A program made the position numbers and the translations under genes. Of a stretch of 64,000 nt of DNA, positions 17,500-38,633 are shown one piece after another. The stretch covers positions 1 to 64,000 of IMG/VR virus record IMGVR_UViG_3300031884_000002; one strand, 5' to 3'. Position 1 is the stretch's first letter. Each line of letters begins with the position of its first letter. The notes beneath the pieces were generated by a model. That model made no database searches and was not told where the DNA came from. It saw nothing but the letters and a program-made list of their open reading frames with translations.

Positions 17500-17596
17500 A
17501 GATAATAAATATCAGATAGAATTATGAAAAATGAATGAAGATAATAAATATCAGATAGAATTATGAAAAATGAATGAAGATAAAAATATCAGATAA
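17500..17596. repeat. Tandem repeat, 39-bp unit, about 2.5 copies
   Basis: AGATAATAAATATCAGATAGAATTATGAAAAATGAATGA at 17500 and 17539, partial copy at 17578; no spacers. Confidence 0.9.
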
Positions 17597-17650
17597 TCGG
17601 CACAAAACAATGTATAAATATTAAAGGTTGACAATAATCTATTTTCTGAT

Positions 17651-20349: not shown

Positions 20350-20934
20350 TTAGTTTTTGGCAACCAAGTAGAATTTGCGACGGGGACGTTCATTTTTGGC
20401 TTTGCGGTTTTTATCTTCAACGTTAGAAAGGATGATAGTGGCAACTTTCTTGCTACCCTTTTCACCCTGATTCATTTTGACCGATAGATATTGATAGATA
20501 GTCGCATCAGGATAACGGTCAAAGCCAAATTCTTTACGAATATCGGCAATAATATCCGACACAAAAACAGACTGGACTAATGCGATTGAACGCAATTTGC
20601 CTAATTCGGCACCAAGGGCATTAATTGCGCCACGTTTTTCCATAAGCTTTTCAATCAGTTGCGCCACGCCATTAACCCCGTTTTTAACGTAATGTGCTCG
20701 AAACGCCAACGGGGTTTTTACGCTGGCGAGAATTGCGTTAATTTCACGCAATTGATTTTTCAGGGAAACGGAGGCATTGTAACGGACGATATTGTTTTGG
20801 CTTTTCAAGGATTTTTTCAGGTTAATCATATGTTTTTTAGTTTTGCGGTTATACTGGTTTAGTTGCTTTCGATATTTAAAGATTATCAGTTTGCCGGTTA
20901 ATTTCAATAAAAATCGTATTTTATTTTGAAGCAC
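20350..20934 (-). CDS. Hypothetical basic protein, possible winged-helix C-domain
   Basis: ORF track; C-terminal RPRRKFY. Confidence 0.6.
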   Translation of the reverse strand: MLQNKIRFLLKLTGKLIIFKYRKQLNQYNRKTKKHMINLKKSLKSQNNIVRYNASVSLKNQLREINAILASVKTPLAFRAHYVKNGVNGVAQLIEKLMEKRGAINALGAELGKLRSIALVQSVFVSDIIADIRKEFGFDRYPDATIYQYLSVKMNQGEKGSKKVATIILSNVEDKNRKAKNERPRRKFYLVAKN

Positions 20935-23456
20935 TTATACTGGTATAAGTGGTATGCGGTGAAAACTGTCTCGATTTGAGACAGTGTGGTATAATTGCTT
21001 AGGCTTGCGGTGAGTTCATTAGCATATTTAATATGCTATTAATCACAACTTTATCAGAGTTTGCCGCACGATAAGCCATTGGTGCAAATCCGTTAGGTGA
21101 ATTGGAATGTGCCTTGCTCCACAATTCAATCCTATCATTGGTACTATGTTCCTTCATGATTTTTAATGCTTCATCAATATCTTTTATTCCATTGGTGCCA
21201 CGCCAAAGAACCATATAAGAACGGTTTGATAAGGTTGCTTCAATGAATAGATTATTGTTGTTTTGCATATGTAAGAGAATATAGATTTAAATCTATTTGT
21301 CAACCGTAAATCACTTCTTTAAAGATTGCCAGTTGAATGAATGCGTCAAAATCCATTGCATCACAATTACAGAGCCAATTGTCCCAAGTATCAAAGTTGT
21401 TTAGATTGGTGCTAGGTGGCTGAGTACAGCCTTTAGGCCACTTATCCGTAAAAATCAAAGGGAACGTTGCAATAAGCATATCCTTGCCAACGGCATGTTT
21501 TATTCCAGTGTCTTGGTTGATAAATCCAAATAACCAGTTTTTATAATTCCAGTCAATACATTCCAACGATGAACCTTGGCTGGCTTCTGGAAAGTTTGCC
21601 ATTATGCCTTTGACTACGGATTCAACTGTTTTGTCGTTAATTTCAATGGTAATTTTCATATGTTATAGAAATTGGTTTTTATTGTGCGGTAAACTCCATC
21701 ATTGTGCCATTGCGGATTTGACGGGCATTGCGGGCCTTGTTAAAGGTCTGACACCGTTCCCGGGCTTGTTCATAAGTCAAGCCGGTATCCACCGTGGTTT
21801 TCCGGCCATTGACAAAGGTTGTCCAATTGGTGCAACTACGTTTGAATGTCTTGTAAAATGTCATAGTCGTAATATATAGATTTAAATCTATTTGTCAAAT
21901 GTTAAGAGTGCGCCACGCATCAAAAACCGCCCAACTATGAAATTGCTTCTTACGTTCCTCAATTGAGGTTCCGGCACACTCCCACAAATCCAATCCACCG
22001 CATTCGGCAACTGTTTCGTCATAGAATGCTTCGATTAAATCTTTATGGATAGGGTCATTTTCAAAATCAATGTCTGGCTTATCGCCACCTGTCCAAGCTC
22101 TACGTTGATAGGTATGTCCTAATTTGGTTGTTATGGTGTATGGAGATGTCATATGTAAGTAAAAGAATATAGATTTAAATCTATTTGTCAATGGATTTTT
22201 GATAGTTATGCATTTATACTGGTATAAATGGATATAGCATAATTGCCGCAGTCCAGTTACGAACCACGGCAACTAACACATATGAACCGCACCAAAATTA
22301 AGATACCAATTTGTCTTGAATGTTAAACAAATCCAGTGCCAATCGAGTACATTCGTCCATTGATACTTTTATTGGAAGATAAACAGGTGATTGAATAAAT
22401 CTTAGCATATTCGTTCCTGATGTTACTCCAGCCCAACGAGAAAGCATTCGAGCTTCTTTTACAGTCAATTCCAAAATAACTTTTTCAATTTGAGGTGGTG
22501 GAGGCGGCTGCGGCACAGATTTAATAGTTGTTACTTTCATATTCAGTATATTATAGATTGTTTATTGTTTGTCAATTCAATTCCAGCAAGGTTTAAACTT
22601 TTCTTTGCGGCTGTAATTCTTTTTGCTTTCGACCCGCTTGGTTACGGGGTTTAATACTCCCCAAGTTTTACGGATGCGAATGTCGGCTTGTTTGATTGTT
22701 GTTTTCATATGTTGATAACAATATATAGATTTAAATCTATTTGTCAACCTTCAATGTTCTGACATTCCGTTATATCAAAGGTTTTGGTAAAATCCTTGCC
22801 ATTGGTCAAAATCAAATCCAATTGGCTTGAATAGTATCCATTGTTATATCCATGTCCAGCAACCCGCACAGGATGCCCATGAATAGGTAGCAATTCAATT
22901 CCATAACCATCGACCCGCTTGAAAAAAGCATCAGTTGACAAATCAAACTCCAATCCGTCAAAATCTGCCAGACTCAAATCATGAAAATACAATCTCAAAT
23001 CATGAAAATACAATTCATGAAACTCACAACAATCTTGACTGTGATAGGATAATAATTCAAGTCCATTGTCAAAGATAATTCCATAGTTATTCACCACGAC
23101 AACCTTGGATTTATTTAAATTAGATATTTGTTCCATATGTGAATACAGTATATAGATTACTGAGTAAAAGTCAATAGAAAATAAAACTATTTTTGCCGCA
23201 AGTAATTATACTGGTATAATTGCTATTTTAAGCGAAGTCCATTCCTCATCTATAATATAGATTTCAATTTAAAAGTCAATCACAATTGATATTCTTTTTT
23301 CAAATATTTAGCAAGGTGTTTTACCGTTTTCAAAAAGCAACGTGCCTCATATTTAGTCAGTGTATGAGTTTTCTTTCGCTTGCGATTGCGGAAACATCGG
23401 ACAGAAAATGTATCATTCATAAGTAAAATTATACAGAATTAAATCTATTAGTCAAA

Positions 23457-23490
23457 TAAAAAAGTTGCCTAGTTTTTAGGCTAGGCAACT
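23457..23490 (-). terminator. Intrinsic terminator
   Basis: AGTTGCCTAG-loop-CTAGGCAACT with an A-run on the left (U-tract on the minus strand). Confidence 0.75.
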
Positions 23491-23506
23491 CGTAACACAT
23501 ACACTA

Positions 23507-24040
23507 TTATACAACCACCAAAGTTTGCTTCATTGCGTTCATTTCAATCACATTGTTAAGCGTGAGACAATTCACGATAGGCTTAAATTCGCTTTCCTTT
23601 TTTGCATATAGCCAAGGTTTGAGGTCATCGTAAGCAATCGGCTTGCCAGTTTTGTCAAAATACTCCGAAAATAGAGTTTTATTGTGCCGATAGAAAAGAT
23701 AAAACTTTTCATTTGGATTTTTATTGATATGGACACAAGTAGGCTTGCCATCCTCATTCATCATAGGAACGTGCCACGATGTTCCTAGAGTGTATTCTAC
23801 TTCGCTGGCGTCAATACCAAGTTTCTTCGCCACGTTTTTCTCTACTGCCTTTTTGAATGAGAAATTGACCCAGCCATTGACAATCGCCCGCTTAAACACT
23901 TCGCCAAACGGATTTTTCTTCTTAATATCCGTAACCGGAGTTACGGCTGTAACCGTAATAAATCGGGATTGAGTTCCGGCATCCACCGTAAGAAACTTAA
24001 CCAACCCAGCAACCGTAAGTTTTTGTATAGCTCGTTTCAT
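23507..24040 (-). CDS. Hypothetical protein (177 aa)
   Basis: ORF with A/C-rich leader, own promoter and terminator. Confidence 0.75.
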   Translation of the reverse strand: MKRAIQKLTVAGLVKFLTVDAGTQSRFITVTAVTPVTDIKKKNPFGEVFKRAIVNGWVNFSFKKAVEKNVAKKLGIDASEVEYTLGTSWHVPMMNEDGKPTCVHINKNPNEKFYLFYRHNKTLFSEYFDKTGKPIAYDDLKPWLYAKKESEFKPIVNCLTLNNVIEMNAMKQTLVVV

Positions 24041-26233
24041 ATTTTTTATTTTTTGGTGTTATGTGTTACTGACAAAAGAGATAATATAGATTTTTAGATT
24101 AAAGTCAAATGTTTTCAATCAAAATTAACAGAATCTTCAAAAATATTATTCAACCGGATGCGAATAGTATCTAACTTTGCCGCAATATTAGGATACTCAA
24201 TAACATCTTCAGCCGTTAATTCGCCAGTGATAATCAGAACATTTTCAATGGCTTCTTTGATAGATTGCTCGTTAAAGTTCATAGTTGTAGAATATAGATT
24301 TTTAGATTAAAATCAAATTAAATCCAGCCATTTTCTGATAGTTGCATAGTAATCATATTCCAAACCACGAGCCAAACAGACACCCTGAAAAAATCCAACA
24401 GTGGAGGAAATCACATGTATTTTACTGGTGGGCGAGTCTGCCAATGATATACATGCGGTCTTAACATTACTATCAATATGTTTAACCAATTCTTCTAAAG
24501 TGCAAGTTTTATAATTCATATGTTCCTAAAAGAATATAGATTTAAATCTATTTGTCAACCGGAATCGTAAAAATCATTAACACCACTTAGACCAATATAA
24601 ATGGAGTTTTATGCGGTGAAAATAGGTTGCATTTATACTGGTATAATAAGGTGTTTAAAAGGTTGGCATATGAGAATAGACAAAGACTCATATGCCAATT
24701 TGAAATGCAATTTATGAAAACAATAACTAAACAGACGATAGCACCAAAATTAGACGGTGACAACTTCAGCCAGCAATTCAACATCGGGTTTATTATTCTT
24801 GCTGGCATTCTTAACACGGCGAATATAACCATTCATCTTCAAATCATGCCGCTTGTTAATCTCATTCAATGTCTCAATATGGTTAATGATGAAATTGGCA
24901 GCTTGAAGCGGAGAAACAGAAGTTGCCATATTAACATTCAGCTTGGAGGTTACGAAATTGCGAACTTCAATCAGACGTTCGTGAGAAAGTGCGTCCAATT
25001 CATTCGTAAAGGTTTTTCCATCGGTGGTTTCGTATGCGATAACTTTTTTCATTTTATTTTTTGGTTTATTGTTGTTATGTGTTACTGACAAGAAAGAGAA
25101 TATAGATTTTTATTTAAATGTCAATCAGATTTCAGTGTAGGCCACAGAAATATCAATTGGTGGTTTGGAAAAAATCCAACCATCGGAATTAGTAGTATTG
25201 TGAGTAGAACTATATTTCTTCTTGGCTTTCTTCTCAGCCGCATTGTGACTGCCAGCTTTGATATAACCGGTTTCAACTCCATTAACATAGACGATGTAAG
25301 TTTTCATATGGTTAAGAATATAGATTTTTATTTAAATGTCAATCTTTTCCTTCAATTCTATCTTCACTCCAATCATCATAATCAGGTTCATCCATTTTAA
25401 CCGTATCGGCCCATTTATCAACATTGGCTTCAATGGCAGCTTCAACCGATTTAATTTCATCCGGTGAAAATCCAGTTTTATTCCAATCCCATTCTTCAAT
25501 GTAAAAATAAGTAGTGCCACGGTCAACGCCCTTGCATCCCCAGTACTCATATGCTCCGATTCCATCGTTTTCCCAGTCCCCTTTGGTGGTGACTTCAATT
25601 TCAACTTCATCTTCGCCACGAGTTGGAAGTTCAACGGATAGTGTAAATGTGTTAATCATAGGATTAGAATATAGATTTAAATCTATTTGTCAAATGAAAT
25701 CAGCAATTTCAATTGCCTTTTCAATATATTCTCCCTTAAGTTCTGCCAATTTACAATCATAATCAAATCTTAGTTGAATCAATGAGTTTCGGATTTTAAC
25801 TCCAGTATCATATGGCAAAATTGCCTTTGGCTTGAACCAGCCCATATAAGATGGAGAATAAACCAATCCTTCATCATTTAGTTTAGTTATTTCAGCACCC
25901 AAGATATAGGGGAACTGGTCATATTTCCAAAAAGCCATTAGTCGTGTATTCATAAATGTAAGAATATAGATTTATATCTATTTGTCAACAGGTTTTTGAT
26001 AATTATGCATTTATACTGGTATAAGTGGTTGATTACCAATTATATAGGTAGAATTAGAATGCGGTGAAACTACTCAGTGAATACTTGAACTAAATTACGC
26101 CACGTCGAAATTGTCTGTTTAAGAAGAAAATCCTTAATTGCTTTCTTTTGCTTACGAGAACATTTAGCATTCATAAGTTTTTTATTATTCTTCACATAGT
26201 ATAAATATAATCTATAAAATGTCAAGTTAAAAA

Positions 26234-26340
26234 TGGTGGGCCTTGACAGGAATTGAACCTGCATCGTCTGTATGTGTTCCAATAGTTATCGTTACGCTTC
26301 TATTGTACTATACTCCCATTTCCGTTTGGGTACAACGCCC
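26234..26340 (-). ncRNA. tRNA-like RNA with CCA end and a greatly extended anticodon arm
   Basis: GGGCGTTG/CAAGGCCC acceptor (one G.G mismatch), T arm GCAGG-TTCAATT-CCTGT, ACCA end; no 7-nt anticodon loop. Confidence 0.75.
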
Positions 26341-26349
26341 ATTAAAATT

Positions 26350-26602
26350 GGTATTTAGAGGATTTCACGTAAGTAATTCATTCTAATAAAGAGGAATTGA
26401 ACCTCAATCAACCCTTGCGGGTAATGCACCTTACATCATATTATCTATCTCTTCAGGAACCATCTAAAAGGAGCTACCTTTTAGAAACCTGTTTCTTTGC
26501 GCTTAGAAATTGTATGCGTCATTTCGAGGGTTCATGACGCTAACCCATGTTTATCTTAACTGTTATTTACATTTTTAATAGGAATGTAATAAACCGAATA
26601 CC
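26350..26602 (-). ncRNA. Candidate 253-nt structured RNA containing an anticodon-less mini-tRNA domain
   Basis: 5' GGTATTCGG pairs with 3' CTAAATACC; internal GAGG-TTCAATT-CCTC and ACCC-GCAA-GGGT; starts at the predicted TSS of the promoter ending at about 26632. Confidence 0.6.
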
Positions 26603-27390
26603 TATATACTACCGATTCTAATCTATTTGTCAACTGTTTTTACGAAACATCCACTTAACCCGAACCATGTTTGTTTGCTGGCAGAAATAAGTTTTAATCT
26701 TCATTTTGTTTATTGGTTGTTTGTTGTTACTGACATAAACAAGCATACAGATTAAAATCTATTCGTCAATCATTATATTCCAACAGGAATTGAATGAGAG
26801 AAGTCCAATCAGGCAAGGGACCATCACCAAAGGAGTTATTAAACTCAGGCGTGTCTGATACAGTAACCCATTGATTCTTATCAGAGTTCCACTGCAATTT
26901 CAACTGATGTTTAACCCAAGAGTCTGGATTTCCAACCTCAATGGCAAATGTATTGTCTTCAAAACGTTCAATGTTAATATTATTCATAGGCGATAAGTAT
27001 ATCAGGAATAGATTAAATGTCAAGGGAATTTTAAAGATATAATTTACTCTAATAGTTGTAGTAGAAGCACTTATACTGGTATAGATAGTATAACAAAAGA
27101 ATGCCGCACTTTTAATGCGGCAATCTATTCGTAGCTCTTAATTCCCCACCTTGCCAAGATTATCTAAACCGCCAACCAAATCCAAAATGAAACAGTTAAA
27201 ACATCTAAAGCAATGGACCAACCGTAAATGTTACTTACTAACTTTTGTTTTTCTGCTTGACTTTTGGACTTCATCATATTAAATAGACAAATCCAACCAA
27301 AACTTGATAGAATCGTCCAAATTACGGCTAAAATTATTAGAAATTTAATCATATGAGTATATTATAGATTTTTATTTATTTATTTATCAA

Positions 27391-27660
27391 TTACTTTGTT
27401 TCGTAAATATTGTATGTTCCTTGAAATACTCCCCACGATGATTGTTCTTTCATAGTATAAGACTCAGGAACTTCATTGGTTCGCATTTGACGGGTCAAAT
27501 ACCACAAATGGCTTTCCTCCCATGTGACACATATCAACTTTTGATTGGGTGGCAGTTTCAATTCAGCATTTCCGCCAAATTGTTTGGCTCTTTGATTTTG
27601 AGTGCAACCAGTTAAAGCCAAGGTTGGAATTAGTAACAGGATTGGTAGTATTCGTTTCAT
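27391..27660 (-). CDS. Small lipoprotein
   Basis: MKRILPILLLIPTLALTGC: signal peptide with lipobox. Confidence 0.7.
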   Translation of the reverse strand: MKRILPILLLIPTLALTGCTQNQRAKQFGGNAELKLPPNQKLICVTWEESHLWYLTRQMRTNEVPESYTMKEQSSWGVFQGTYNIYETK

Positions 27661-28080
27661 AGTGTTAAAAGTATATAGATTGTTATTTATTTGTCAAGAT
27701 CCAAACGGTTCTACATTCCAATCATCATCTGCTACTTTGATTATAGTAGTTTTACTAATTGTTGAATCAGGAATACAAATCGCAACTTTGCGAGACCAAT
27801 TACGAAATATACGAAAATAATATTTTACACCATCAATGGTTACTGGATCTATTCTGCAAACTACGGAATAAGATACAGAAAAAGGTCTTTTATCATATTT
27901 AAGATGCGCTTGAATATAATCTGTTACTGCCCCACCGCACGAACCAATTGAACAATATGTATATGGAATTTTCATATTTGTATTTTATAGATTTTAGAAT
28001 AAATGTCAACAAAAAATAATTTATGTTTTTTGGTAGAGCACTTATATGTATATAAGAACACTCTACCAGAAAGGTAAAAT

Positions 28081-28827
28081 ATGGCAAGCAAAATAATGAC
28101 AATAGATAAAAATGAATTACAACTAATAATAGACAACAGTAAAACTTACGGTGACGTATTACGTCATTTTGGGTTGGAAAATAAAGGAGGAAATCACAAT
28201 ACTCTAAAACGAAGGATAAAAAATGATAATTTATCAACTGATAATATTATTAAATTTAAATCAGGAGGAGGATGGAATAAAGGATTACATGGATTTGATA
28301 TTAAAGCATTATCTAAAGAAGAAGTATTAAATATAGTGTTTATTAAAAATTATACTGGTGGAATACGACCAAGAACATATATTAGGAGATATAATCTAAT
28401 AGAAGAAAAATGTAATGAATGTGGATTAACTAATATCTGGAATAATAAACTAATTACATTAGAATTAGATCATATAGATGGCGACTCACATAATAATTTA
28501 TTAACTAATTTACGATGGGTATGTCCTAACTGCCATAGTCAAACTGATACATTCAGAGGTCGAAATAGAAAAATAGAACATTTTTGTGAATGTGGAAAAT
28601 TAAGATGTAAATCATCCAATAAATGTGTAGATTGTAATCATAAAGAACAATTAAATAAAAATCATAAAATTATTTGGCCAAGTGATACTGAACTTATGGA
28701 AATGATGAAGACTACTTCATTATATAAATTAAGTAAAACTCTTGGTGTTACTTCCAATTCTATTAGAAAACATTGTTATAAACGTAATATAAATTGGAGG
28801 AAAGATGGTGCAATGGGAGGGATTTGA
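28081..28827 (+). CDS. HNH homing endonuclease; 3' end overlaps tRNA-Lys antisense
   Basis: CNECG...LELDHIDGDSHNNLLTNLRWVCPNCHSQT. Confidence 0.9.
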   Translation: MASKIMTIDKNELQLIIDNSKTYGDVLRHFGLENKGGNHNTLKRRIKNDNLSTDNIIKFKSGGGWNKGLHGFDIKALSKEEVLNIVFIKNYTGGIRPRTYIRRYNLIEEKCNECGLTNIWNNKLITLELDHIDGDSHNNLLTNLRWVCPNCHSQTDTFRGRNRKIEHFCECGKLRCKSSNKCVDCNHKEQLNKNHKIIWPSDTELMEMMKTTSLYKLSKTLGVTSNSIRKHCYKRNINWRKDGAMGGI

Positions 28828-28885
28828 ACCCGTCTATCGTCCGATTAAAAGTCGGATGCTTATTCCAGATTTAAGCTTCCATTGC
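28806..28885 (-). tRNA. trnK: tRNA-Lys(UUU), canonical short variable loop
   Basis: TCCGA-CT TTT AA-TCGGA; GCAATGG/CCATTGC acceptor; ACCA. Confidence 0.9.
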
Positions 28886-29980
28886 ATTAAAAAGAAATCA
28901 AAGTTTTTACCACCAATCAACTTAATTACTGTCGATTGATGGCTAGGGTTATCCACCTGTTTGCTGCAACCAACATCTATATAATACCGATTAAATCTAT
29001 TTTGTCAACTGTTTTCAGCTAACCGCCCAATTAAGTTTCTCCGCATAATTCCACACTTCATTAGTGGAAAACGTGCCATCCTCATTTTCAACTTGAACGT
29101 CAACATTGGTATGATTTTTGAATGCGGCTGTAATGGCAAATTCCAGTCCGGTATGGTCCACTGGGAAGGTTAGGGTTTCAGTTTCAGTTTCAACGATGTA
29201 GTTTGTTTGTTTCATAGGTTATATATTATAGATTTTTAGTTAAAAGTCAATCAACAATTGGATTATTTTCCCAAGCTGGTGAAGTGCCATCAGGATTATT
29301 ATATTCATACTGAAAAAATCCTCCAATGTCACCACCCAAAGGGTTATTCTCAATAATCTTATCAATACAGGAATAACAGTAAGGATTGTTTTTAAGGACA
29401 ATATCATCTACCCAGTTAAGTGTTGTCATATTTAAGATTATAGAGATTATTGTTTATTTGTCAATTTATTTGCGGTTAATTCTTTCGTAGGTTCTGGCAA
29501 TGGCTTCCAGTATGCAGATGAATAATAGTAATGAACCAACCAATTTCATTGTCAATGTTTCTTTTGATTTCTTTTACAGGTTTGAAAAGAATGCTTGGAA
29601 GTTTTCTTTTGCCGGAATCCATTACGATGAGCCACTGGATTTTGCCAGCAAGGACCATCATTATAGATGCTGCGGTTGATGTAAGTGTCACCGTATATAG
29701 TTTCTTTTTGCATATGAGTAGAATATAGATTTAAATAGATTTGTCAATCTATTCTGGTATATATTTTATATTTCATCGTAGGATAATATTTCCTCAAATC
29801 TATTACATAAGAATTTATTTCTTCTAATGTATGAAACTCCTGATAATTTGTAATTCCATTATAATAACAGTCAATTCGTACAATATATTTCATAGTGTTA
29901 AAAGTATATAGATTAGAATTAAAAAGTAAAGAAAAATACCGGAATATTTATTAGACATTCCGGCATTTTTTACTTGATTT

Positions 29981-31000
29981 TTACACCGTAGCCAGCAATT
30001 TCTCTCCCCGCACTTTCCATGCCACTTCGATTTCAGGGTCACGAACCCCAGTCCAAAAATCCCGCTTGGCAACCAATCCGGCACCAAACTCCGAGGATTC
30101 AACTTGCTTCATCGCATTATCCTTAGAGCGGCTGCTGGTATGCGTATAGTAATCCGTAACCGCTGACATTGCATCGCTCAAATCGTTACCATCATTGCCC
30201 TTGCCAGTGCGAAATAAAGTTTCCAACGTTTCAACCGTGTTAAACGTGCGAGTGGAAAGCTTTTCCGGCTTTGTAACCCGAGTGAGAAAACCGGCAAACA
30301 AACAACGTGCTTCGGTAACACCAATCTTGACTTCGGACATTTTTTCAAACTCAATTTGAAACTCAGCTTGCACCCCAATAGCCTTATCAATCAACTTGGC
30401 AAACTCAGGCAATCGCAACGTAGCATTTTTCGTATGCCGCTGGTTAATTGCAATATCATCACTTTCATCGGCACCACCATTAGCAATCTTATTTTCAACC
30501 GAAAACAGATTAGCCGAAAAAGTATTATCACATACAGTACAAACATTAGAAGTATTAACCCACAATACACTTGACTTATCGTGACCATTACCAAAGTTAA
30601 GATAAGCCGAAAACTCCCTGCCTGCCGCTTTGAACTTTTCCATACCATTAAGTTCAACTGATAGGAAAACCCTACCACGGTTACGGGTGGAACCATTAGA
30701 CACAATCTTGTGAGACGTGCCACCAATCGAGCCACGAACCAAATCCAAGAATGCCTTATTCGTAAGGGGTGTAAAAGTTGCCGGATTGTAAGGTTTTCCA
30801 ATTTCCAATCCTTCAACATCGGAGCATTCCAAAATGGAATATTTGCTAGGTTGTCCCCTTTTTTCCAGTTGCACCGCAACCAAATCCCATTTGTTAAGAT
30901 AAACCGTATCAAGTGTAAGTTCCGGCACCACGTTCGTTTTACCATGCCAGCCCATTTCAGTTGCTTCGTGCATGTCGTATGTAAAGATTCTATCAGCCAT
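29981..31000 (-). CDS. DUF932-family phage/plasmid protein
   Basis: GWHGKT, RGRVFLSVEL, NGHDKSS, VCDNT motifs. Confidence 0.75.
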   Translation of the reverse strand: MADRIFTYDMHEATEMGWHGKTNVVPELTLDTVYLNKWDLVAVQLEKRGQPSKYSILECSDVEGLEIGKPYNPATFTPLTNKAFLDLVRGSIGGTSHKIVSNGSTRNRGRVFLSVELNGMEKFKAAGREFSAYLNFGNGHDKSSVLWVNTSNVCTVCDNTFSANLFSVENKIANGGADESDDIAINQRHTKNATLRLPEFAKLIDKAIGVQAEFQIEFEKMSEVKIGVTEARCLFAGFLTRVTKPEKLSTRTFNTVETLETLFRTGKGNDGNDLSDAMSAVTDYYTHTSSRSKDNAMKQVESSEFGAGLVAKRDFWTGVRDPEIEVAWKVRGEKLLATV

Positions 31001-31349
31001 ATGTTTTATTTTTGTTTAATTGTTTCGTTTACTGCTACCAACATTTAAGATATTACAGATTTATTTTTAAAAGTCAAACTAAAACAGATTTATTTTTAAT
31101 GTTCCGGTTTGGTTTGTAATACCGTTTACTTCCAAAAGAATATAGATTTATTCTAAAGAGTAAAGATAAATCTATTCTATTTTTTGCCAGCAGTTCCCAT
31201 GCCAACCGGCACAGCAGTACGCACTTATATTGGTATAAGTGGTTGATTACCAATTATATAGGTAGAATTAGGATGCGGTGAAAACAATAAAAAACGCCTT
31301 GCATTCGGTGAAGAACACAAGGCATTAACACATGAACCCAACACCAAAA

Positions 31350-31664
31350 TTAAGATTTAATTTTTCTTGTTGAACCCTTCTTTGGTTTCTCGGTGACTTG
31401 CACCTTTGTCACAGGAACCGGCACACTTGGCTTAAGTTTCAACAACTTAGCAAGTTGCCGCTTGGAGCCGCCGGGAATGCAACTCTTAATCTTCTCATCC
31501 AAAGATAGAGCATCATACTTGGCTTGCCTATCATCCGCTTCATATTGAAGCTTTCGCCGCTTGGCTTGCAAATGAGCCGATGAATATCCATTAGTTTTAC
31601 CCCGCTTGGACTCCGTAGAAGTCGAGGTTGAGGTTGATTTGGTATTTACGTATTTTTGTGCCAT
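31350..31664 (-). CDS. Basic hypothetical protein
   Basis: ORF track; own promoter at about 31690-31723. Confidence 0.65.
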   Translation of the reverse strand: MAQKYVNTKSTSTSTSTESKRGKTNGYSSAHLQAKRRKLQYEADDRQAKYDALSLDEKIKSCIPGGSKRQLAKLLKLKPSVPVPVTKVQVTEKPKKGSTRKIKS

Positions 31665-34600
31665 AATTTTTTATTTTCTATTCGTTACGTTTAAGAGTAT
31701 ATCAGATTAAATCTATTTGTCAATCACTTCCGTTACAATTGGAAACTTCATATCAATAATATCAAACCCCATTTGTTTAAAATAATCCATAACACCGTTA
31801 GGGTCGGTTTGCCAATCACGTTTAAGTTTTTCAATGCTTTTCTTTGGCATTTGGAGAATAATCGAAGTTTTTGGTGTTTTCATATTTAAAATTATATAGA
31901 TTTTAGGTTAAATGTCAAATTTAAATTGAAGTCCTCTTTCCTGCTGGATTTGTTTAGCCGAATTAAAATCATCACTACCATAGGTAAATGAACTTAATGG
32001 ATGTTCGTAATATTTACAGCCACAATAAGCACATTGTCCTTTTGGTTCTCCCATATCATCACAGATAGCAGGGTCTTCAAGGTATTTTCCACAAGTGGTT
32101 AAAATGATTGGTTCACGCATATAGGTATAGAATATAGATTGTTATTTAAATGTCAATAGAATTTTTGGGAGTTGACAAATAGATTTATATCTATATACTG
32201 CTTTAACTATGAACGACAAAATACCACATATTCCTAAACTTGCAAGTATTATCTACTGGAAGGATACCGCCGAAAAGGAGCGAGTCGAGCGGTGGATTAA
32301 GAAGTTAATGGAACAGGGACATATCGAAGCCCATACTACAAGGGAATACAATTCTTATTGCGGTGAACCAGTATGGTTTATACCGTGATTATTCCATTGA
32401 CATTTATATTTTAATCTATATACTTTATCAACTATGAAAATTTACATTTATCATCGTTTCAAAAATTGGTGTCCTCCCCGAACATTTGGAGTGGAATGTT
32501 ATGGTCCATTTAATTCGGTGAAAGGTGCTACTTTGGCACTGGAATATCAAAAACGTGTAAATGCCAATACGGGAGAATATCTTAGTTCGGTGAAAATCAT
32601 TCGTAGAAAAAATGAACCAGAGTTTAGAACTTTGGAATGGCCGGATGTCTGTAAGTCAGACCGACGGTTTATGGAAGATAAAAAAGATTGGCATTTGATT
32701 TGACATTTAAATAATAATCTATATTCTATAAACATATGAATGATTTAACTGCTAGAGAACATGCCTATGCCATCACAATGGCTGTTAATACACTGGTTTC
32801 CGCCATGGGAATGGTAGCCGAAAACAAACAACGAGAAATTGAAGGTAAATCTATGGCATATACCGAACAACAATTTAATGACTTAATTCTTAAGAATGGA
32901 TGTCACCATAATGGTGTTTTAGGATTAAATTGGAATAATTATTGACTTATAAAAAATAATCTGTATGCTTTAAATATTATGAATCTCAAACAATATACTG
33001 TCGGTGAAGTTACATATGGTTATTCTCTTAAATCCAAGAAATGGGAGTTTAAGATTAAGGATTTTACTTTTCTTTCTCCTTGTCCCGGTGGAAATGAAAT
33101 GGGTGAAAAGTTTGCCAAAATTGTTGCGGCAGGTTACGTTCGCACTAAAGGAAATGGAATTGGTGGTCTGGCACGGTCAAACATTGACAGACTGCTTGCG
33201 GTGAAATAATACTATGAATAAAAAAATTGTTGAAAAAGCACTTGAAGCATGGGATGAATATAATTCATTTGTTAATTTTAAACCTACCAATGAAAACTTT
33301 GATATAATTAAAGCGGCATTTATCAAAGGTTATATTTGGAAATGTGCCCAACTTGAAATCGAAAAATTTCCAATGTGAAATAATTATAGATTGACACTTT
33401 CTCGTAAACCTGTTATTATGTTGCCATTATGAATAATCAATGGCAATTTAAGAATGGGCTGAATACAACGGAGTTTCAAACTTTTCCGTTGGCTTTCAGG
33501 GCAATGTTTAATTTAGTCCGCAAAGGCGTCGAAGATAAGAAGCCGGTGGATACGTCAAAGTTTTCAATTGTTGGACCTAAAAATCCAAGAGGTGAAAACG
33601 TGCGTTATAACTATAATCAGGCAATGGAGTTTGCCGGTTCATTTGGTTTGGTAAACCAAGATGGATATTTGAATGGTAAAGAGTTTAAACGTAAAAACAG
33701 TTGACAAATAAAATATAATCGGTATAGTTATTTGTGTTGGGAGAGTACCTCAGTGGTGATTTGTGAAAATGTTAATCTTAATACCTTGACTTTTGGCGAA
33801 GACTATACTATAATTCAATATCCTTAATAACATATGCATATTCACAAACAAAATATTTTAAATCTAAAAGATGGAGAAGTTTATTTTTTAGATTTAGGCG
33901 AAGAGTCAGGTGCTGAGGTTTGGAAGAAAAATGACCTTTACTTTTTATTTGACATTCCTCAATATGGAGGCACTCCAACGTATTGTGGACATTTCAATGT
34001 ATTAAATATTGACGACGCAATTAAAAATGTGTTATCTTGGACTTAATTATTATGAATAAACAAGAACGACTATTGCGAATTAAAGCATTTGCTGAAAAGC
34101 AAGAAATAGAAACTACCATTCTATTTTCTGAACTTCCATTCTCCAAGCAGGAAATTGAAGAAACGGTTAATGATATGGAGGCATATACCGAACATAAAAG
34201 AAATGAAAAAGAAGCATTGACTTCGGATGAATAATCCGTATAATTAAAATATGAATACTACACGAGCAATCTATATTGGAAACCGATTTAGCCGAAATAA
34301 TTTTACGGGTGATTATAACAAAGATACTTGGCAATTCTTTCCCGATGGAATGCCAAACTTTGATTTTTTCACTGGGCCTAATTTTGTTTATCTTCCTCAT
34401 GATTGTAATGAGTGGGATGATTCTGATGAAGCCGATAAATCAATTGCAGGTTATATTACTTTACCGATATGATGTTTCTATTCCCGTTCGGGAATACTTT
34501 ATACAATTATACTAATATAATTAGTAATGTTACCGCTCGGGTATTTATACTAGTATAAATGGTATATCAGGCCAACTTTTATTTTTAATTTATAGTTAGC

Positions 34601-35713
34601 TACAATGGTAATCCTACCATCATCCATCTGATTAAATTGTTGCTTTTGCTTTGGCTATGATTTCACCAGCTCGCTTCATTGCGGCAATAACGGATTCATC
34701 GCCTTCAACATCACAATTTGACCCTAATCCTATTAAATATAGGGATTCAAGTGCTTCAAGCACTTCATTATATTCAATATGATTTTTCATAGTTTTAACA
34801 GTATATAGATGTTTGTTTATTTGTCAATATCAGATTTCCGATACAGTTAAATACAAATCGATTTTAGGAGAATCAAAATAACCTGTTTTAATAATTGCTT
34901 CAATATCCTCATCATCTAAGACATAACCAGTATCTTTCAATTTTTCACTAAAACAAGCCTTGGCTTCTTTAATACCGGCTTCATCATTTACAAATGAAAT
35001 AATACCGTCGAGGACTCCGTTATAGATTGTGATTACGTTAATGGTTTGAATTCTCATAGTGTTAAAAGTATATAGATTTATTCTTAGTTGTCAACTTGGT
35101 TTTTTATTATCACCTGCAATTTCAATCCATCGAAGAGGATGATTAGTTTTACGAAATGGGGTTACATTAACTGGATGGCATAGATGACTCATAGGTGCAT
35201 TTTCCCAATGAATATCAGGCCAGCATACTATGCCACTTAGAGAATCATTAAAAAAACTTTTACCTACTAAAATACCAATTTTATTGACATCTGGTTTATA
35301 TCCAGATTCTTTCATCCAGTGTTTACTATGTTTAACTAAAGTTCCAATCGGATAATCGGTAAAGTTTACGATTTTCATATTTAAAAGTATATAGATAAAA
35401 ATCTATTTGTCAATAGGAAAATGCCGCTTGACTTTTAGATGATAATCTATATACTTTTGACTATGAATATTATACGCACAATTTTTACAGACCATAAAAG
35501 CGGTGACATTTCATATGGATTTCGAGCCTATGATGATACGGGCTGCACATATTGCACCGGAATGCTTCAAGATGAACTCTTATATAAGGATGAAAACTTT
35601 CTAATTCTTATCATTGAACAATATGCCGATGAAGTATTTGATGATATGTTTAGAGTTTCCGATGAAATTATCATTGATGATACAAACTATAATATTGATA
35701 GGAATATTGAACC

Positions 35714-36358
35714 TTGGAAATTGGTTGCTATTTAGATTATCATCTGTATAATACTCATATGATTAAATTACAGGAACAATTCAAATCGGGTGCCGGTGGA
35801 TTTTCGGGACCAGAAATCCTAACGTATAATCAGGTTATTCGTTCGGATACGGCTGCGGTGTATGAACGGTCTAGAGATGGTAAAGTAAAGGATTTTGAAG
35901 TATTTAAGATTAAGTTTTATCCAAAGGGAATGATACAAAAGTTTCCTAATGGTACTACAACCACAATCGAGGATGATACCGAACGCTATCCATCCAATGG
36001 TGACTTTGGAAAAATTGCTTGGTGTTGTGGAAAAACGGAGGCAATGCGTCGTTTCAATGAAATTAGTAATTCAGCGGTGAAATTGGATGATGAAGATGAT
36101 GAAATTAAAATCATTGAAATTGATGAAACTGTGCCAGTCGTATCAACTGGACGCAGGGGACGTGCTCCTAAACAACGTCACGATTTAGTTATTCCCGATG
36201 GAGAGTTTACCACTAATGATTTAACTGAATTGAATCAGGTTGACCGTAATGATGCTGTATTCTATATTAACCAAGAATTAGGCAAGAAAATCCAATTCAT
36301 TGGAGAAAAACGTATCGGTGAAAATAAACGACCCAGTAAGATTTATAAGAAGATTTAA
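35714..36358 (+). CDS. Hypothetical protein with a putative C-terminal DNA-binding (wHTH-like) domain
   Basis: RRGRAPK...PDGEFTTNDL...RPSKIY; similar to 38011-38553. Confidence 0.6.
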   Translation: MEIGCYLDYHLYNTHMIKLQEQFKSGAGGFSGPEILTYNQVIRSDTAAVYERSRDGKVKDFEVFKIKFYPKGMIQKFPNGTTTTIEDDTERYPSNGDFGKIAWCCGKTEAMRRFNEISNSAVKLDDEDDEIKIIEIDETVPVVSTGRRGRAPKQRHDLVIPDGEFTTNDLTELNQVDRNDAVFYINQELGKKIQFIGEKRIGENKRPSKIYKKI

Positions 36359-36365
36359 TTTTAAT

Positions 36366-36442
36366 GGCTCGATGGTGAAAATGGATTATCATAAGGCACT
36401 TCTAATGCTAAGTTCTGGGTTCAACTCCCAGTCGAGCCACCA
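36366..36442 (+). tRNA. trnR: tRNA-Arg(UCU)
   Basis: GGCTCGA/TCGAGCC acceptor; loop CT TCT AA; CTGGG-TTCAACT-CCCAG; ACCA. Confidence 0.9.
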
Positions 36443-37092
36443 TTTCTATTGACAAACATCTAAAAATCTATATTCTATAAACATATGGGATTACGAATAA
36501 ATCTATTTAAAATGTTAGGACTTCCGCCAACTGTTGGAGAATATTTAGATGGTTCATTTGCAGTTATGGTTGATGAACTTGATATTTGGAATTAGAAATA
36601 AATTGACATTTCCCTTTAAGTAGTTTATATTTATTGTTATATGGCAAAAAAACCCGACGACAAGAATAACGAAAACTTGGATATGTTCAAGGATTTTCTA
36701 AAAAAGAAACAGGGTAATACTGATAAACCCAAAATTGTTCCAACACATCCTATGGATGAATTAGCCAAAGAAGGAGAGAAGCTATTGGCGGATGAAAATG
36801 CTGTAATTGAGCCGCCAGGAATTCAAGAAGCTACCAAGCCAGCACCCAAGATTGATAAGAATCCTTATTCACGAGCCAAATCATATGTTCTATCCAAAAT
36901 GGATGAATGGAATAGAAATAAGTTTCTTAAAATCTGTCGTGATATGGAAAAGGGATTGACGGTTGATAATTTTGCCGACCAACGGCTTCATGATGATACA
37001 TCTTGGAAAATTACTATTCTTGGTAATGATTTAGCCGATGGAATTCCATTGCCTAAAAAGTAAAATAGATTAGAATTAAACTTTACACAACA

Positions 37093-37120
37093 CCGAACTG
37101 ATTTAGTTCGGTTTTTTGTT
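37093..37120 (+). terminator. Intrinsic terminator
   Basis: CCGAACT-GATTT-AGTTCGG followed by TTTTTTGTT. Confidence 0.8.
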
Positions 37121-38010
37121 TTATAGCATTTATACTGGTATAATAAAACATCCATTTATACCAGTATAGTTAGTTTAATTAAGTAAAAAATACATTTGAC
37201 ATATAGATTTAAATCGGTATTCTATTGGCATATGAAAAAACACATTAAATGTATAGTATCAGTTACAAACTCAAACGGTGAACCTGATTTGTTTTTTATT
37301 ATTGTCAATGCAACAGAGGAACAAATTGAAAATGGGGAACATTACGATACTGCAAAAGATGAAGCTTGTGATTATGGATACGAGCCTTATTTGGTGTATG
37401 ATGAAAATGATTCGGCTGGCAAATCTATGCTTTCATTATTTCAATGGGAAACTGCCTCGGTGATTGAATGTAATTGACAAATAAAATACAATCTATATAC
37501 TCTTAAATATGAAAAACAAAATACCATGTTGTAAAATTACCAATCCAGTTTTGAAAAAAACATTGGCAACTCTAACTAAAGAAAATGGCTATCCCATTGA
37601 TGAACGATATTGGGATTATGACAGTAACAGTGCTATTTTTTTCGTGCCAAACGATGAAGTAAATCGGGGTGCTGGATTTGCTTTTACTAACTTGACAAGC
37701 TATAATAATTCAAGCGGTGATACTGCCTTTAAAACGGTTTCTATTGAAGAAATGTTTGATATTATGTCTAAACCTTATGAGGCTCCATTTCAGCCTATTG
37801 AGGTGAAATTGAATGATGAATATACCGCTAAAGTTCAACGGGATGGTTCGGTGAAAGTTGGATGCCAAACTTTTCCTATGCAATCGATTGTTAGTCTTTA
37901 TACCGCAGTCCAATTGGTAGTATCTAAAAATAATATTTGACAAATAGATTTTAATCTGTAAACTTTACATATCGTTAAAAACAAAACAACAAAAAACAAA
38001 AAATTAAATT

Positions 38011-38553
38011 ATGAAAAATAAAAACAACAAAAATAAAAAATCAACCGCAACTGTTAAACCCGCTGGTCCTGGTCGTCCTGCCAAGGCCATTAAATGGCCC
38101 GCTACCAAGCAATTCACTATGGATGACATGGTGAAGGTCAATGAAGGTATTTGTTCCAAGCTGTGTATTATTCAGCATTTGCAACGGGATGCCAAGCTTG
38201 GCAAGAAGTCCATGATTGTCAAGACGGATGAGAAGCGGGATAATTCTAGTGGGCGGGGACGCAAGCTCGAAGTGTATATGAAGCGGGCAAAGGTTGATGG
38301 GGATGTCAGCATTACCAAAGTTAGCCGAACGGTGAAAGTGGTTGATATTGCTCCGGTTACGACTACGGAACAATACGAGGCAATGAAGGCAGAATTGGCT
38401 GCTCCGTCTGCTCCGGTTGCGGTTGCCGATATTCCGGCTGTTGAAACGGTTGCGACTCCTGAAGTTGTGGCTGAAGTGACTCCTGAACCGGCTCCGGTGG
38501 CTGAAGTTGTGGAAACTCCGGTTGTGGCTGAAACTGTTACGGTCACGGCATAA
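38011..38553 (+). CDS. Hypothetical protein: basic wHTH-like N-domain plus Ala/Val/Pro/Glu-rich tail
   Basis: GPGRPAK...PATKQFTMDD...RGRKLEVY. Confidence 0.7.
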   Translation: MKNKNNKNKKSTATVKPAGPGRPAKAIKWPATKQFTMDDMVKVNEGICSKLCIIQHLQRDAKLGKKSMIVKTDEKRDNSSGRGRKLEVYMKRAKVDGDVSITKVSRTVKVVDIAPVTTTEQYEAMKAELAAPSAPVAVADIPAVETVATPEVVAEVTPEPAPVAEVVETPVVAETVTVTA

Positions 38554-38572
38554 TAAAACAAATTAAAACAAT

Positions 38573-38602
38573 AACCCTATTCTTAACGGAATAGGGTTTT
38601 TT
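38573..38602 (+). terminator. Intrinsic terminator
   Basis: AACCCTATTC-TTAACG-GAATAGGGTT followed by a T-run. Confidence 0.8.
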
Positions 38603-38633
38603 ATTTGACATATAGATTTTAATCAATATACTC

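What the first reader, a model, noticed from the sequence alone, without database searches (positions are those of the whole stretch)
21281..25686. Perfect palindrome ATAGATTTAAATCTAT filling the promoter spacer
Seen: six exact copies (21281, 21876, 22169, 22725, 24536, 25671) and looser ones (about 25967, 32179, 35390, 37200, 38610, 54407). The AATCT half-site next to -10 is kept in most promoters. Inference: an operator for a dimeric phage regulator giving graded shut-off or activation, or an ssDNA hairpin used by a HUH/integron-type recombinase. The IS right end in this window also ends in TTGAC beside a hairpin.
Basis: partly seen in the sequence, partly recalled or inferred. Interest (0 to 1): 0.6.

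Follow-up and report, generated by a model that had tools for sequence, protein, structure and literature searches.

The report
Palindromic-spacer early promoters of jumbo phage
The 16-base palindrome is the spacer of a 28-base bacterial-type early promoter repeated in front of many tiny, unrelated, apparently leaderless genes of a 354-kb lake phage; the copies mark the joints where gene cassettes are gained and lost, and it is still open whether a protein also reads the palindrome.

Summary
There are six exact copies where none is expected by chance, and every site with at most one mismatch in the 353,772-bp genome lies at 21.3-32.2 kb.

Read on the minus strand, each copy fills the 16-nt spacer of a 28-nt unit: TTGACA, spacer, TATWCT. 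About 85-100 such units occur in the genome (0-1 in shuffles), mostly at 20-70 kb.

- **Leaderless layout:** in 59 of 85 units the ATG starts 6-9 nt after the -10. In 34 of 68 the upstream ORF ends at the TGA inside TTGACA.
- **Right arm:** it is a promoter element common to the family (C at -15 in 75 of 85).
- **Left arm:** it defines a subclass of about 20 units.
- **Genes:** the six copies front six unrelated ORFans.
- **Cassette turnover:** a related strain lacks exactly one promoter-to-promoter cassette. A diverged relative has other cassettes between the same promoters.
- **Closest known:** PeSL regulatory cassettes of T4-type phages. Here the upstream terminator stem-loop is mostly missing, there is no Shine-Dalgarno sequence, and a dyad sits inside the spacer.

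An operator for a dimeric regulator stays possible (about 0.3): the arms are conserved, the centre varies, and no recognisable repressor is encoded. The hairpin/HUH/integron reading is rejected.

The parts
21276..21303 (-). Promoter unit with the perfect palindrome (21281-21296). ATG of an 89-aa ORF (20999-21268) starts 7 nt after the -10. The TGA of the upstream ORF 21300-21659 lies inside the -35.
21871..21898 (-). Promoter unit with the perfect palindrome (21876-21891). ATG of a 61-aa ORF (21679-21864) starts 6 nt after the -10. The TGA of the upstream ORF lies inside the -35.
22164..22191 (-). Promoter unit with the perfect palindrome (22169-22184). 85-aa ORF 21895-22152. It shares about 45 nt of upstream flank, including the second dyad motif, with the unit at 25961-25988.
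   Evidence: (D16)
22720..22747 (-). Promoter unit with the perfect palindrome (22725-22740). 43-aa ORF 22577-22708. The whole cassette is conserved in L098 (85% nt). Strain X20 has T22731A in the palindrome centre.
24531..24558 (-). Promoter unit with the perfect palindrome (24536-24551). 68-aa ORF 24313-24519. It lies within the 1.1-kb stretch that strain X20 replaces by 72 nt.
25666..25693 (-). Promoter unit with the perfect palindrome (25671-25686). 106-aa ORF 25339-25659. It is one edge of the one-cassette deletion in strain X20.
25961..25988 (-). Promoter unit, palindrome with 1 central mismatch. 87-aa ORF 25690-25953, which is the cassette absent from strain X20.
23428..23455 (-). Palindrome-class unit (2 mismatches in the right arm). 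It is directly preceded by a strong terminator hairpin (23491-23462), so this is a classical terminator-plus-promoter composite.
26742..26769 (-). Palindrome-class unit (2 mismatches), followed by the conserved long leader of repeat family D10.
29720..29747 (-). Unit whose left arm is a direct, not inverted, copy of the right arm.
32129..32199 (.). Back-to-back divergent pair of units: 32129-32156 on the minus strand and 32172-32199 on the plus strand (palindrome with 1 mismatch). The leftward and rightward cassette arrays start here.
35386..35413 (-). Palindrome-class unit (2 central mismatches).
37196..37223 (+). Palindrome-class unit (right arm changed at 2 positions, left arm intact).
37937..37964 (+). 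Palindrome-class unit (2 mismatches, left arm intact).
38605..38632 (+). Palindrome-class unit (2 mismatches), preceded by terminator 38573-38598. It drives the GP88-family gene 38640-39422.
54405..54432 (-). Unit with a palindrome one base shorter (15 nt).
20350..32156 (-). Leftward array of about 35 small ORFs. Most have their own 28-nt unit and an ATG 6-11 nt after the -10. No two ORFs are related, and nearly all match no known family.
32172..40241 (+). Mainly rightward array of the same kind, with a short leftward group at 34167-35413.

Best explanation
The palindrome is the spacer of the 'master' version of this phage's early promoter.

**What the unit is.** It is 28 nt long: an invariant -35 (TTGAC, then A or T), a 16-nt spacer, and a -10 of the form TAnnnT (mostly TATACT or TATTCT). 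I infer that it is read by the host's primary-sigma RNA polymerase.

**What it drives.** Transcription would start about 7 nt after the -10. That is at, or up to 3 nt before, the ATG, so most messages are leaderless. Genes are packed so tightly that the previous gene's stop codon is often the TGA inside the next -35.

**The two arms.**
- The right arm (AATCTA, next to the -10) is a promoter element shared by the whole family.
- The left arm (TAGATT) is carried by a subclass of about 20 units.

**Why the copies are alike.** The near-identical units flank unrelated ORFan genes. They act as short homology patches at which promoter-plus-gene cassettes are deleted, inserted and swapped, and through which the promoter copies homogenise. 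This is the way PeSL cassettes behave in T4-type phages. The six perfect copies are therefore members of one spreading promoter lineage, not operator sites proven to be read by a protein.

**What is shown and what is inferred.**
- Shown: the anatomy, the statistics and the cassette differences between strains.
- Inferred: use by host polymerase, early timing, the leaderless starts, and recombination as the cause.
For: **Promoter family**
- A weight-matrix scan finds 101 units against 0-1 in shuffled genomes. TTGAC, A24 and T28 are invariant in 85 of 85 units, T23 too.
- An independent sigma-70 consensus scan ranks the same sites top, nearly all with a 16-nt spacer.
- The pattern '-35, 17 nt, TAnnnT, 6-9 nt, ATG' occurs 80 times in the genome. 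The same pattern read backwards occurs 0 times.
- The gap from the -10 to the ATG is 6-9 nt in 59 of 85 units.
- The upstream ORF ends at the TGA in the -35 in 34 of 68 units.

**Not gene duplications**
- Flanks differ right up to the edges of the 28-mer.
- There is no protein similarity among about 70 ORFs of 17.5-41.5 kb.

**Cassette turnover**
- Strain X20 joins 25693 to 25994. It lacks exactly the ORF between two palindromic units, and the contig has 47 nt beyond the joint.
- X20 replaces 24094-25211 by 72 nt, with one edge inside the unit at 24081-24108.
- In X20, two base changes (25328 and 25332) turn a non-palindromic spacer into the near-palindrome of the neighbouring unit.
- The relative L098 (67-89% nt identity in shared genes) has homology blocks that begin or end in promoter units at 5 of 8 edges. 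It carries 4.2 kb of other cassettes where our blocks abut.
- L097 has two perfect copies around genes unrelated to ours.
- In L098, a variant with a damaged -35 and the same centre occurs three times, so units are copied whole.

**Lineage-specific spacers, as concerted evolution predicts**
- Six related phages keep the architecture: 18-64 matches each in the five longer records and 6 in the 67.5-kb fragment G002, against 0-2 backward-pattern matches per record.
- Each has its own element next to the -10.

**Known precedent:** PeSLs (PMC2839356, PMC4122927) and lineage-specific early-promoter consensus sequences in front of novel ORFs in T4-like phages (PMC1524935).
Against: - There are no RNA data. 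No RNA run holds this phage, so starts and timing are inferred.
- The host is unknown. Cultured kin by capsid protein (Flavobacterium phage immuto, Microcystis phage Mel-JY01) lack these units.
- Within the palindrome class the left arm is at least as conserved as the right arm, while the 4 central bases vary. For sites with at most 2 mismatches the counts are left 2, centre 16, right 7. Pure hitch-hiking does not predict this; a reader of the dyad does.
- Units with at least 6 of 8 dyad pairs number 15 against 6.5 expected from column shuffles (maximum 14 in 2000 shuffles).
- Within 20-40 kb, neighbouring units are not significantly more alike than random pairs (p = 0.26). Genome-wide they are (p = 0.003).
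- The strain evidence rests on contigs of one run plus two metagenome contigs.
Confidence: 0.55

Rival explanations
1. The dyad is an operator. A dimeric phage-encoded (or host) DNA-binding protein sits on the two 6-bp arms inside the spacer. It blocks or tunes RNA polymerase at the roughly 20 promoters that carry both arms, giving that subclass its own timing. Each cassette would then carry its own control site.
For: - It is a perfect 16-bp dyad centred in a 16-nt spacer, where a bound protein would exclude polymerase.
- In G000, L097 and L098 the arms are conserved and the 4 central bases vary. The left arm varies less than the centre.
- There is an excess of units with at least 6 of 8 dyad pairs.
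- In L098 several copies keep both arms although the -35 is degraded.
- In the relative G006 the element next to the -10 is often the reverse complement. The four units there with a matching left arm are all inverted, none direct (weak, p about 0.06-0.16).
- When the right arm changes, the left arm does not compensate. This fits a protein site better than a hairpin.
Against: - No HTH_3, RHH_1 or HU-type domain is found anywhere in the genome.
- The 40 small proteins of the region that were scanned gave no DNA-binding match.
- Only a minority of family members carry the left arm.
- The left arm also occurs shifted by one base, and as a direct copy.
- No stand-alone sites occur outside promoters.
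- Identical variants are shared by several copies, so the number of independent changes is small. Counted as distinct variants, the arm-versus-centre contrast is only p about 0.08 (my count).
Confidence: 0.3
2. The dyad helps recombination itself. It would be a site where a phage recombination or junction-cutting protein acts, or where templated (quasi-palindrome) repair copies one arm from the other. The promoter unit would then be an active crossover point rather than passive homology.
For: - Cassette joints fall at the units.
- The two linked changes in X20 both create new dyad pairs.
- A variable centre with intact arms is what hairpin-templated repair would leave.
Against: - Non-palindromic units are cassette joints too, for example the 24081-24108 edge.
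- The stem is too short and too weak to extrude.
- Right-arm variants are not copied into the left arm.
- No dedicated recombinase was identified.
Confidence: 0.08
3. The palindrome works as a single-strand hairpin. Either it is a DNA substrate of a HUH (IS200/IS605 TnpA) or integron-type recombinase, or it is an RNA terminator or processing hairpin in read-through transcripts.
For: - The genome does encode a Y1 (HUH) transposase at 110898-111263 and four TnpB genes.
- With no terminator between most cassettes, read-through RNA would contain the palindrome.
Against: - Hairpin energy is -2.2 kcal/mol (DNA) and -3.1 (RNA), within the range of shuffles.
- There are no G-C-rich stems and no proper U-tract.
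- The IS end hairpins are G+C-rich and unrelated in sequence.
- No tyrosine recombinase is found.
- No compensatory pairs are seen.
Confidence: 0.03

Closest known systems
PeSLs (promoter-early stem-loops) of T4-type phages RB49/phi1, T4/PST and KVP40/nt-1 (Arbiol 2010, PMC2839356; Comeau 2014, PMC4122927)
   Same: - Repeated, near-consensus sigma-70-type early promoters.
- They sit in hyperplastic regions full of small ORFans of a phage with a T4-type capsid protein.
- The sequence is lineage-specific.
- They lie at the edges of insertions, deletions and replacements between close relatives.
   Different: - At the six perfect copies and most others there is no terminator stem-loop upstream. 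The previous ORF's stop codon lies inside the -35 instead.
- Only a few units (23491-23428, 29970-29903, 38573-38632) have the classical terminator-plus-promoter form.
- There is no Shine-Dalgarno sequence; the ATG sits at the expected start site.
- The only dyad is weak, A+T-rich, and inside the spacer.
- Mini-circles were not tested.
Early promoters of T4 and T4-like phages (host sigma-70 dependent, with extra conserved positions; PMC1524935)
   Same: - Host-type -35 and -10.
- Phage-specific conserved positions in and around the spacer.
- Dozens of copies, many in front of novel ORFs.
   Different: - The -35 is the exact bacterial consensus rather than GTTTAC.
- The spacer is 16 nt.
- The conserved element next to the -10 is AATCTA rather than a TG or GT-rich motif.
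- A subclass is dyad-symmetric.
- The messages are leaderless.
Operators that lie between -35 and -10, for example the Arc operator in the P22 ant promoter, or MerR-family sites (from my own knowledge, not tested here)
   Same: A dyad-symmetric site centred in the promoter spacer. The half-sites contain TAGA/TCTA, as the Arc operator does.
   Different: - No cognate protein is known or recognisable here.
- There are about 20 copies, on unrelated genes.
- One half is a general promoter element.
- The spacer has normal length, so no MerR-like untwisting is needed.
Leaderless genes with a -10 box a fixed distance upstream of the start codon (lambda cI from PRM; many genes of Actinobacteria and Deinococcus; from my own knowledge)
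   Same: TAnnnT lies 6-9 nt before the ATG, with no ribosome-binding motif.
   Different: Here this is the rule for a whole phage early gene set (80 units) and for six related uncultured lake phages. The host is unknown.
Integron attC sites and IS200/IS605 end hairpins
   Same: Short imperfect or perfect dyads at cassette or element boundaries.
   Different: - No integrase is encoded.
- The site is far shorter than attC.
- The hairpin is unstable.
- The sequence is unrelated to the phage's own IS ends.

Membership tests
Sigma-70-type (primary sigma) promoter | -35 hexamer close to TTGACA and -10 hexamer TAnnnT, 16-18 nt apart | tested here: met
   TTGAC, T23, A24 and T28 are invariant in 85 units and the spacer is 16 nt. 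The same sites rank top in an independent consensus scan.
Sigma-70-type (primary sigma) promoter | Placed upstream of genes, in their orientation, far more often than chance | tested here: met
   80 units with an ATG 6-9 nt downstream, against 0 for the backward pattern. 101 matrix hits against 0-1 in shuffles.
Sigma-70-type (primary sigma) promoter | Transcripts start about 7 nt after the -10 | not testable with these tools
   No RNA run holds the phage.
PeSL regulatory cassette (T4-type phages) | Strong early promoter repeated in hyperplastic regions rich in ORFans | tested here: met
PeSL regulatory cassette (T4-type phages) | Stem-loop terminator just upstream of the promoter | tested here: not met
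   This holds for only about 3 units in 20-40 kb. At 34 of 68 units the upstream ORF runs into the -35.
PeSL regulatory cassette (T4-type phages) | Shine-Dalgarno sequence and start codon at the 3' end of the element | tested here: not met
   The ATG lies 6-9 nt after the -10, which leaves no room for a ribosome-binding site.
PeSL regulatory cassette (T4-type phages) | Elements lie at insertion, deletion and replacement points between close relatives | tested here: met
   X20 has a one-cassette deletion between two units and a replacement with one edge in a unit. In L098, block edges fall in units at 5 of 8.
PeSL regulatory cassette (T4-type phages) | Mini-circles formed by recombination between flanking elements | not testable with these tools
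   This needs inverse PCR on infected cells or virions.
Operator of a dimeric repressor or activator | Dyad-symmetric site overlapping the promoter | tested here: met
   A perfect 16-bp dyad lies in the spacer.
Operator of a dimeric repressor or activator | Half-sites constrained while the centre is free | tested here: inconclusive
   Mismatch counts are left arm 2, centre 16, right arm 7 for sites with at most 2 mismatches. Copies are not independent; by distinct variants the contrast is p about 0.08.
Operator of a dimeric repressor or activator | A cognate DNA-binding protein | tested here: not met
   No HTH_3, RHH_1 or HU domain in the genome. No DNA-binding family among 40 local proteins. 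Novel folds and host proteins are not excluded.
IS200/IS605 TnpA (HUH) substrate | Stable subterminal hairpin like those at the element's own ends | tested here: not met
   -2.2 kcal/mol. The IS ends carry G+C-rich hairpins of another sequence.
Integron attC | Integron-type tyrosine recombinase and a 57-141 nt imperfect dyad (size range from my own knowledge) | tested here: not met
   No Phage_integrase match in the genome. The dyad is 16 nt.
Intrinsic terminator | G+C-rich stem followed by a U run | tested here: not met
   The stem has 6 pairs, only one of them G-C, and is worth -3.1 kcal/mol; 28 of 200 shuffles fold as well. The terminator scan does not list it.

The most novel reading that the evidence does not exclude
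Each cassette of the palindrome class carries its own operator inside its promoter. An unrecognised dimeric protein of the phage reads the two 6-bp arms. Newly captured ORFan genes would then be plugged at once into a ready-made timing circuit: leaderless promoter, embedded operator, and the previous gene's stop codon in the -35. That would be a self-contained, regulated, exchangeable gene cassette without an integrase.
Probability: 0.25. Interest if true: 0.65.

Novelty: new variant of a known kind. Interest (0 to 1): 0.45.

Why it matters
**For annotation.** It gives a ready map of about 85-100 early promoters and probable transcription starts for an uncultured 354-kb lake phage and its relatives. 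It also shows that this phage group seems to run its early programme almost entirely on leaderless messages, which constrains what the unknown host can be.

**For phage evolution.** It extends the PeSL idea, that promoter repeats act as joints for shuffling ORFan cassettes, from coliphage and vibriophage T4 relatives to a distant freshwater jumbo-phage lineage. The form here is more compact: no terminator, no ribosome-binding site, and the stop codon inside the -35.

**For regulation.** If the dyad proves to be a protein site, it would be a compact regulated cassette design of interest for phage engineering.

Tried and rejected
- **Segmental duplication:** rejected. Flanks differ at the unit's edges and the ORFs share no similarity.
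- **Hairpin roles:** rejected on energy and on lack of compensatory change.
- **Link to the IS elements:** the four TnpB copies are only about 69-70% alike where they align at all. The window's element ends at about 17336, not at a TTGAC. The IS605-type end hairpins are unrelated.
- **T9-A10-R11 of the spacer as a stop codon for upstream ORFs:** rejected; only 3 of 68 ORFs end there.
- **Looking for a regulator:** Pfam and PHROGs on 40 local proteins, one Atlas look-up, and whole-genome scans for HTH_3, RHH_1, HU, Sigma70_r2 and AsiA found nothing useful. The AsiA scan rang in no control genome, so it says nothing.
- **Host inference:** TnpB has no close kin in 185,579 species genomes. Cultured phages with the nearest capsid protein lack the promoter architecture. 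The host stays unknown.
- **Near-identical DNA in phage records:** none. The exact 25-mer is absent from viral contigs.
- **Pairing test:** does the left part match its own right element better than other units' right elements? Weak in this genome (12 against 7.8, p = 0.03) and not significant in G006.
- **Several 'joints'** with only 31-32 nt on one side and summed depth 48 come from a contig made of the repeated promoter itself. I did not count them.
- **Not used:** the large profile search, structure prediction, complex prediction, and any genetic code other than table 11.

Full report
**1.

The 16-mer occurs six times exactly, at 21281, 21876, 22169, 22725, 24536 and 25671. None of 100 dinucleotide-preserving shuffles had any. 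With up to three mismatches there are 25 sites against 3.4 expected.

The window is the first 64 kb of a 353,772-bp virus record with 30.5% G+C. In the whole genome, every site with at most one mismatch lies between 21.3 and 32.2 kb.

**2. What surrounds it.**

The genes here run on the minus strand. On that strand every copy reads: TTGACA, one A, the palindrome, then the rest of a -10 box (TATTCT or TATATT). An ATG follows a few bases later.

A weight matrix built from these sites and iterated over the genome finds 101 units. Block-shuffled genomes give 0-1. Among the 85 best units:
- TTGAC, T23, A24 and T28 never vary, so the unit is a -35 box, a 16-nt spacer and a TAnnnT -10 box.
- The four bases AATC, 3-6 nt before the -10, are strongly kept (C20 in 75 of 85).
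- T9 and A10 are kept in about 80%.
- The G that makes the left arm occurs in only 21.

An independent sigma-70 consensus scan puts the same sites at the top, nearly all with a 16-nt spacer. So the right arm of the palindrome is a general promoter element of this phage, and the left arm defines a subclass.

**3. Leaderless, seamless cassettes.**

- The gap between the -10 and the ATG is 6-9 nt in 59 of 85 units.
- The combined pattern occurs 80 times in the genome; read backwards, it occurs 0 times.
- From general knowledge, bacterial polymerase starts about 7 nt after the -10. These messages should therefore begin at, or up to 3 nt before, the start codon.
- In 34 of 68 units with an upstream same-strand ORF, that ORF ends at the TGA inside TTGACA.
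- Good terminators are few.

The units are concentrated at 20-70 kb. They run leftward from 32.15 kb and mainly rightward from 32.17 kb, starting from a back-to-back pair.

The roughly 70 ORFs of 17.5-41.5 kb share no similarity with each other. Apart from DUF932, GP88, DUF7448 and an HNH nuclease, they match no family of known function.

**4. What kind of phage this is.**

- It has a T4 gp23-type capsid protein. The nearest cultured matches are about 52% identical: Microcystis phage Mel-JY01 and Flavobacterium phage immuto.
- It is held by many lake-water metagenomes; no RNA run holds it.
- No Sigma70_r2 domain is encoded, which fits use of the host polymerase.
- Six uncultured relatives (G001-G006; capsid protein 61-83% identical for G001-G004; G005 and G006 were reached by a DUF932 homologue and by the promoter pattern) have the same architecture. 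The five longer records give 18-64 matches each and the 67.5-kb fragment G002 gives 6, against 0-2 backward-pattern matches per record.
- The three named kin have only 1-2 matches against 1-3 backward-pattern matches. The host is therefore unknown.

Each relative has its own element next to the -10:
- a canonical TG-type extended -10 in G003 and G005;
- ATCGG in G001;
- TCTGA in G002;
- mostly AATAGA in G006, which is the reverse complement of ours.

Spacers that are strongly conserved within a phage but arbitrary between phages are what concerted evolution of repeated units gives.

**5. The copies behave as cassette joints.**

Contigs of run X20, a strain 90-99% alike, show the following.
- They join 25693 to 25994. 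This strain lacks exactly the 87-aa ORF and one of the two palindromic units that flank it. The two units share no 31-mer, so this is not a graph artefact, and the contig continues 47 nt beyond the joint.
- They replace 24094-25211 by 72 nt, with one edge inside the unit at 24081-24108.
- They carry two changes (25328 and 25332) that turn the non-palindromic spacer of unit 25315-25342 into the near-palindrome of the neighbouring unit at 25961-25988.
- They carry a change at 22731, in a palindrome centre.

A scan of metagenome contigs with the 25-mer found two foreign contigs.
- L098 (13.9 kb) is collinear with window 13.3-20.9 kb at 73-91% identity. Beyond that it shares only isolated blocks (67-85%), which begin or end in promoter units at 5 of 8 edges.
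- L098 has 4.2 kb of other cassettes between two blocks that abut in our phage.
- L097 has two perfect copies around genes unrelated to ours.

This is the behaviour described for PeSLs of T4-type phages: early-promoter repeats in hyperplastic regions that mediate deletion, insertion and replacement of ORFans (PMC2839356, PMC4122927).

The differences are listed in the membership table. The upstream terminator is missing at most units, there is no ribosome-binding site, and the only dyad sits in the spacer. Three units in 20-40 kb do have the classical terminator-then-promoter form.

**6. Is the dyad itself read?**

For:
- Across 46 promoter-context sites of G000, L097 and L098, mismatches pile up at the central three positions (14, 15, 13) and are rare in the arms.
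- Among sites with at most two mismatches, the left arm has 2, the centre 16 and the right arm 7.
- Units with at least 6 of 8 dyad pairs number 15 against 6.5 expected.
- Several L098 copies keep both arms though their -35 is damaged.

Against:
- Identical variants recur, so independent events are few. By distinct variants I count 2, 7 and 6 (p about 0.08).
- The left arm also occurs one base further right (6 units) or as a direct copy (11 units).
- Right-arm variants are never compensated.
- The pairing tests are weak.
- No classical repressor domain exists in the genome.

I therefore keep 'operator for a dimeric regulator' as a live rival at about 0.3, not as the lead.

**7. Hairpin readings fail.**

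- The stem is worth -3.1 kcal/mol as RNA and -2.2 as DNA, within the range of shuffles.
- The phage does carry an IS605-type element with a Y1 transposase, but its end hairpins are G+C-rich and unrelated in sequence.
- No tyrosine recombinase is encoded.
- The window's TnpB element is bounded at about 16053-17336 by an empty site in L098.

**8. Verdict.**

It is best understood as the master copy of a leaderless early-promoter family whose repeats double as joints of an ORFan cassette array. That makes it a compact variant of the PeSL system, found here in a freshwater jumbo phage lineage.

A separate protein reader of the dyad is possible and testable. Interest is moderate: the kind is known, while the leaderless, stop-in-promoter packing and the dyad subclass are new details.

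Noticed in passing
window 20936-20947, 22215-22226, 23207-23218, 24634-24645, 26012-26023, 27072-27083, 31226-31237, 34546-34557, 37131-37168, 41847-41858, 46396-46465: A second dyad motif, TTATACCAGTATAA on the minus strand, has about 14 copies, and all good copies lie at 20-47 kb. It sits in the longer intergenic gaps, after terminators and 2-35 nt before early units, often with a TTTCACCGCAT box nearby. Copies at 26004-26069 and 31218-31283 are 94% alike over 66 nt. The related contig L010 has a matching pair of motifs in diverged form (ATACTG, 2 nt, CAGTAT, plus TCACCGA boxes). On the plus strand it reads like an extended -10 (TGGTATAAT). Its function is unexplained. It is a better operator candidate than the palindrome in question.
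   Followed up: partly
window 16053-17336: A TnpB-only insertion element (tnpB 16150-17301). Its exact limits are given by an empty site in the related contig L098. Other TnpB genes lie at 7353-8513 and, outside the window, near 91-92 kb and 108.6-109.8 kb. The last of these sits beside a Y1 transposase gene at 110898-111263.
   Followed up: partly
window 17500-17595: A 39-nt tandem repeat, 2.5 copies, 98% alike, just upstream of a weak promoter-like unit at 17628-17655. It could be iterons or a binding array.
   Followed up: no
window 24042-24108, 25058-25124, 26703-26769, 31011-31077: Four units are followed not by an immediate ATG but by a conserved leader of about 40 nt that begins GTCAGTAACA (repeat family D10). 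L098 has the same leader after its unit at 5667. This is a long-leader subclass, possibly with a translational or RNA-level signal.
   Followed up: no
window 22973 (within ORF 22744-23136): A 21-nt in-frame tandem duplication is present here and absent from strain X20. This ORF gives a below-threshold match to DUF7448 (24.6 bits against a 27-bit cut-off).
   Followed up: no
window 15248-15637 and 486-42502: A phage-encoded tmRNA (Rfam 82.9 bits) and seven tRNA genes (His, Lys x2, Thr, Arg, Met, Ile).
   Followed up: no
window 2760-4034, 8505-9689, 28081-28827, 40234-41136, 54919-56025: Larger genes around the arrays: an ArdC-N domain with a below-threshold IrrE-like peptidase match, an ADP-ribosylglycohydrolase, a weak HNH-nuclease match (17.8 bits, below the 24.8-bit cut-off) on the opposite strand inside the leftward array, a GIY-YIG nuclease, and a T4-type RNA ligase.
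   Followed up: no
G000 111327-111393 and 240393-240459 (outside the window): A 67-nt stretch (unit plus upstream flank plus first codons) is duplicated 129 kb apart in front of different genes. It shows that a unit can travel with some flank.
   Followed up: no
L103 (G006 60-80 kb) and the other G006 loci: In the related 139-kb contig G006, the commonest element next to the -10 is AATAGA (11 of 64 units), the reverse complement of this phage's AATCTA. The four units there with a matching left arm are all inverted.
   Followed up: partly
G003 and G004 (relatives): Some of their units carry another dyad, built on the -35 itself (GACTTTT, a few bases, AAAAGTC). Part of this may simply reflect a T-run followed by an A-run in the spacers.
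   Followed up: no
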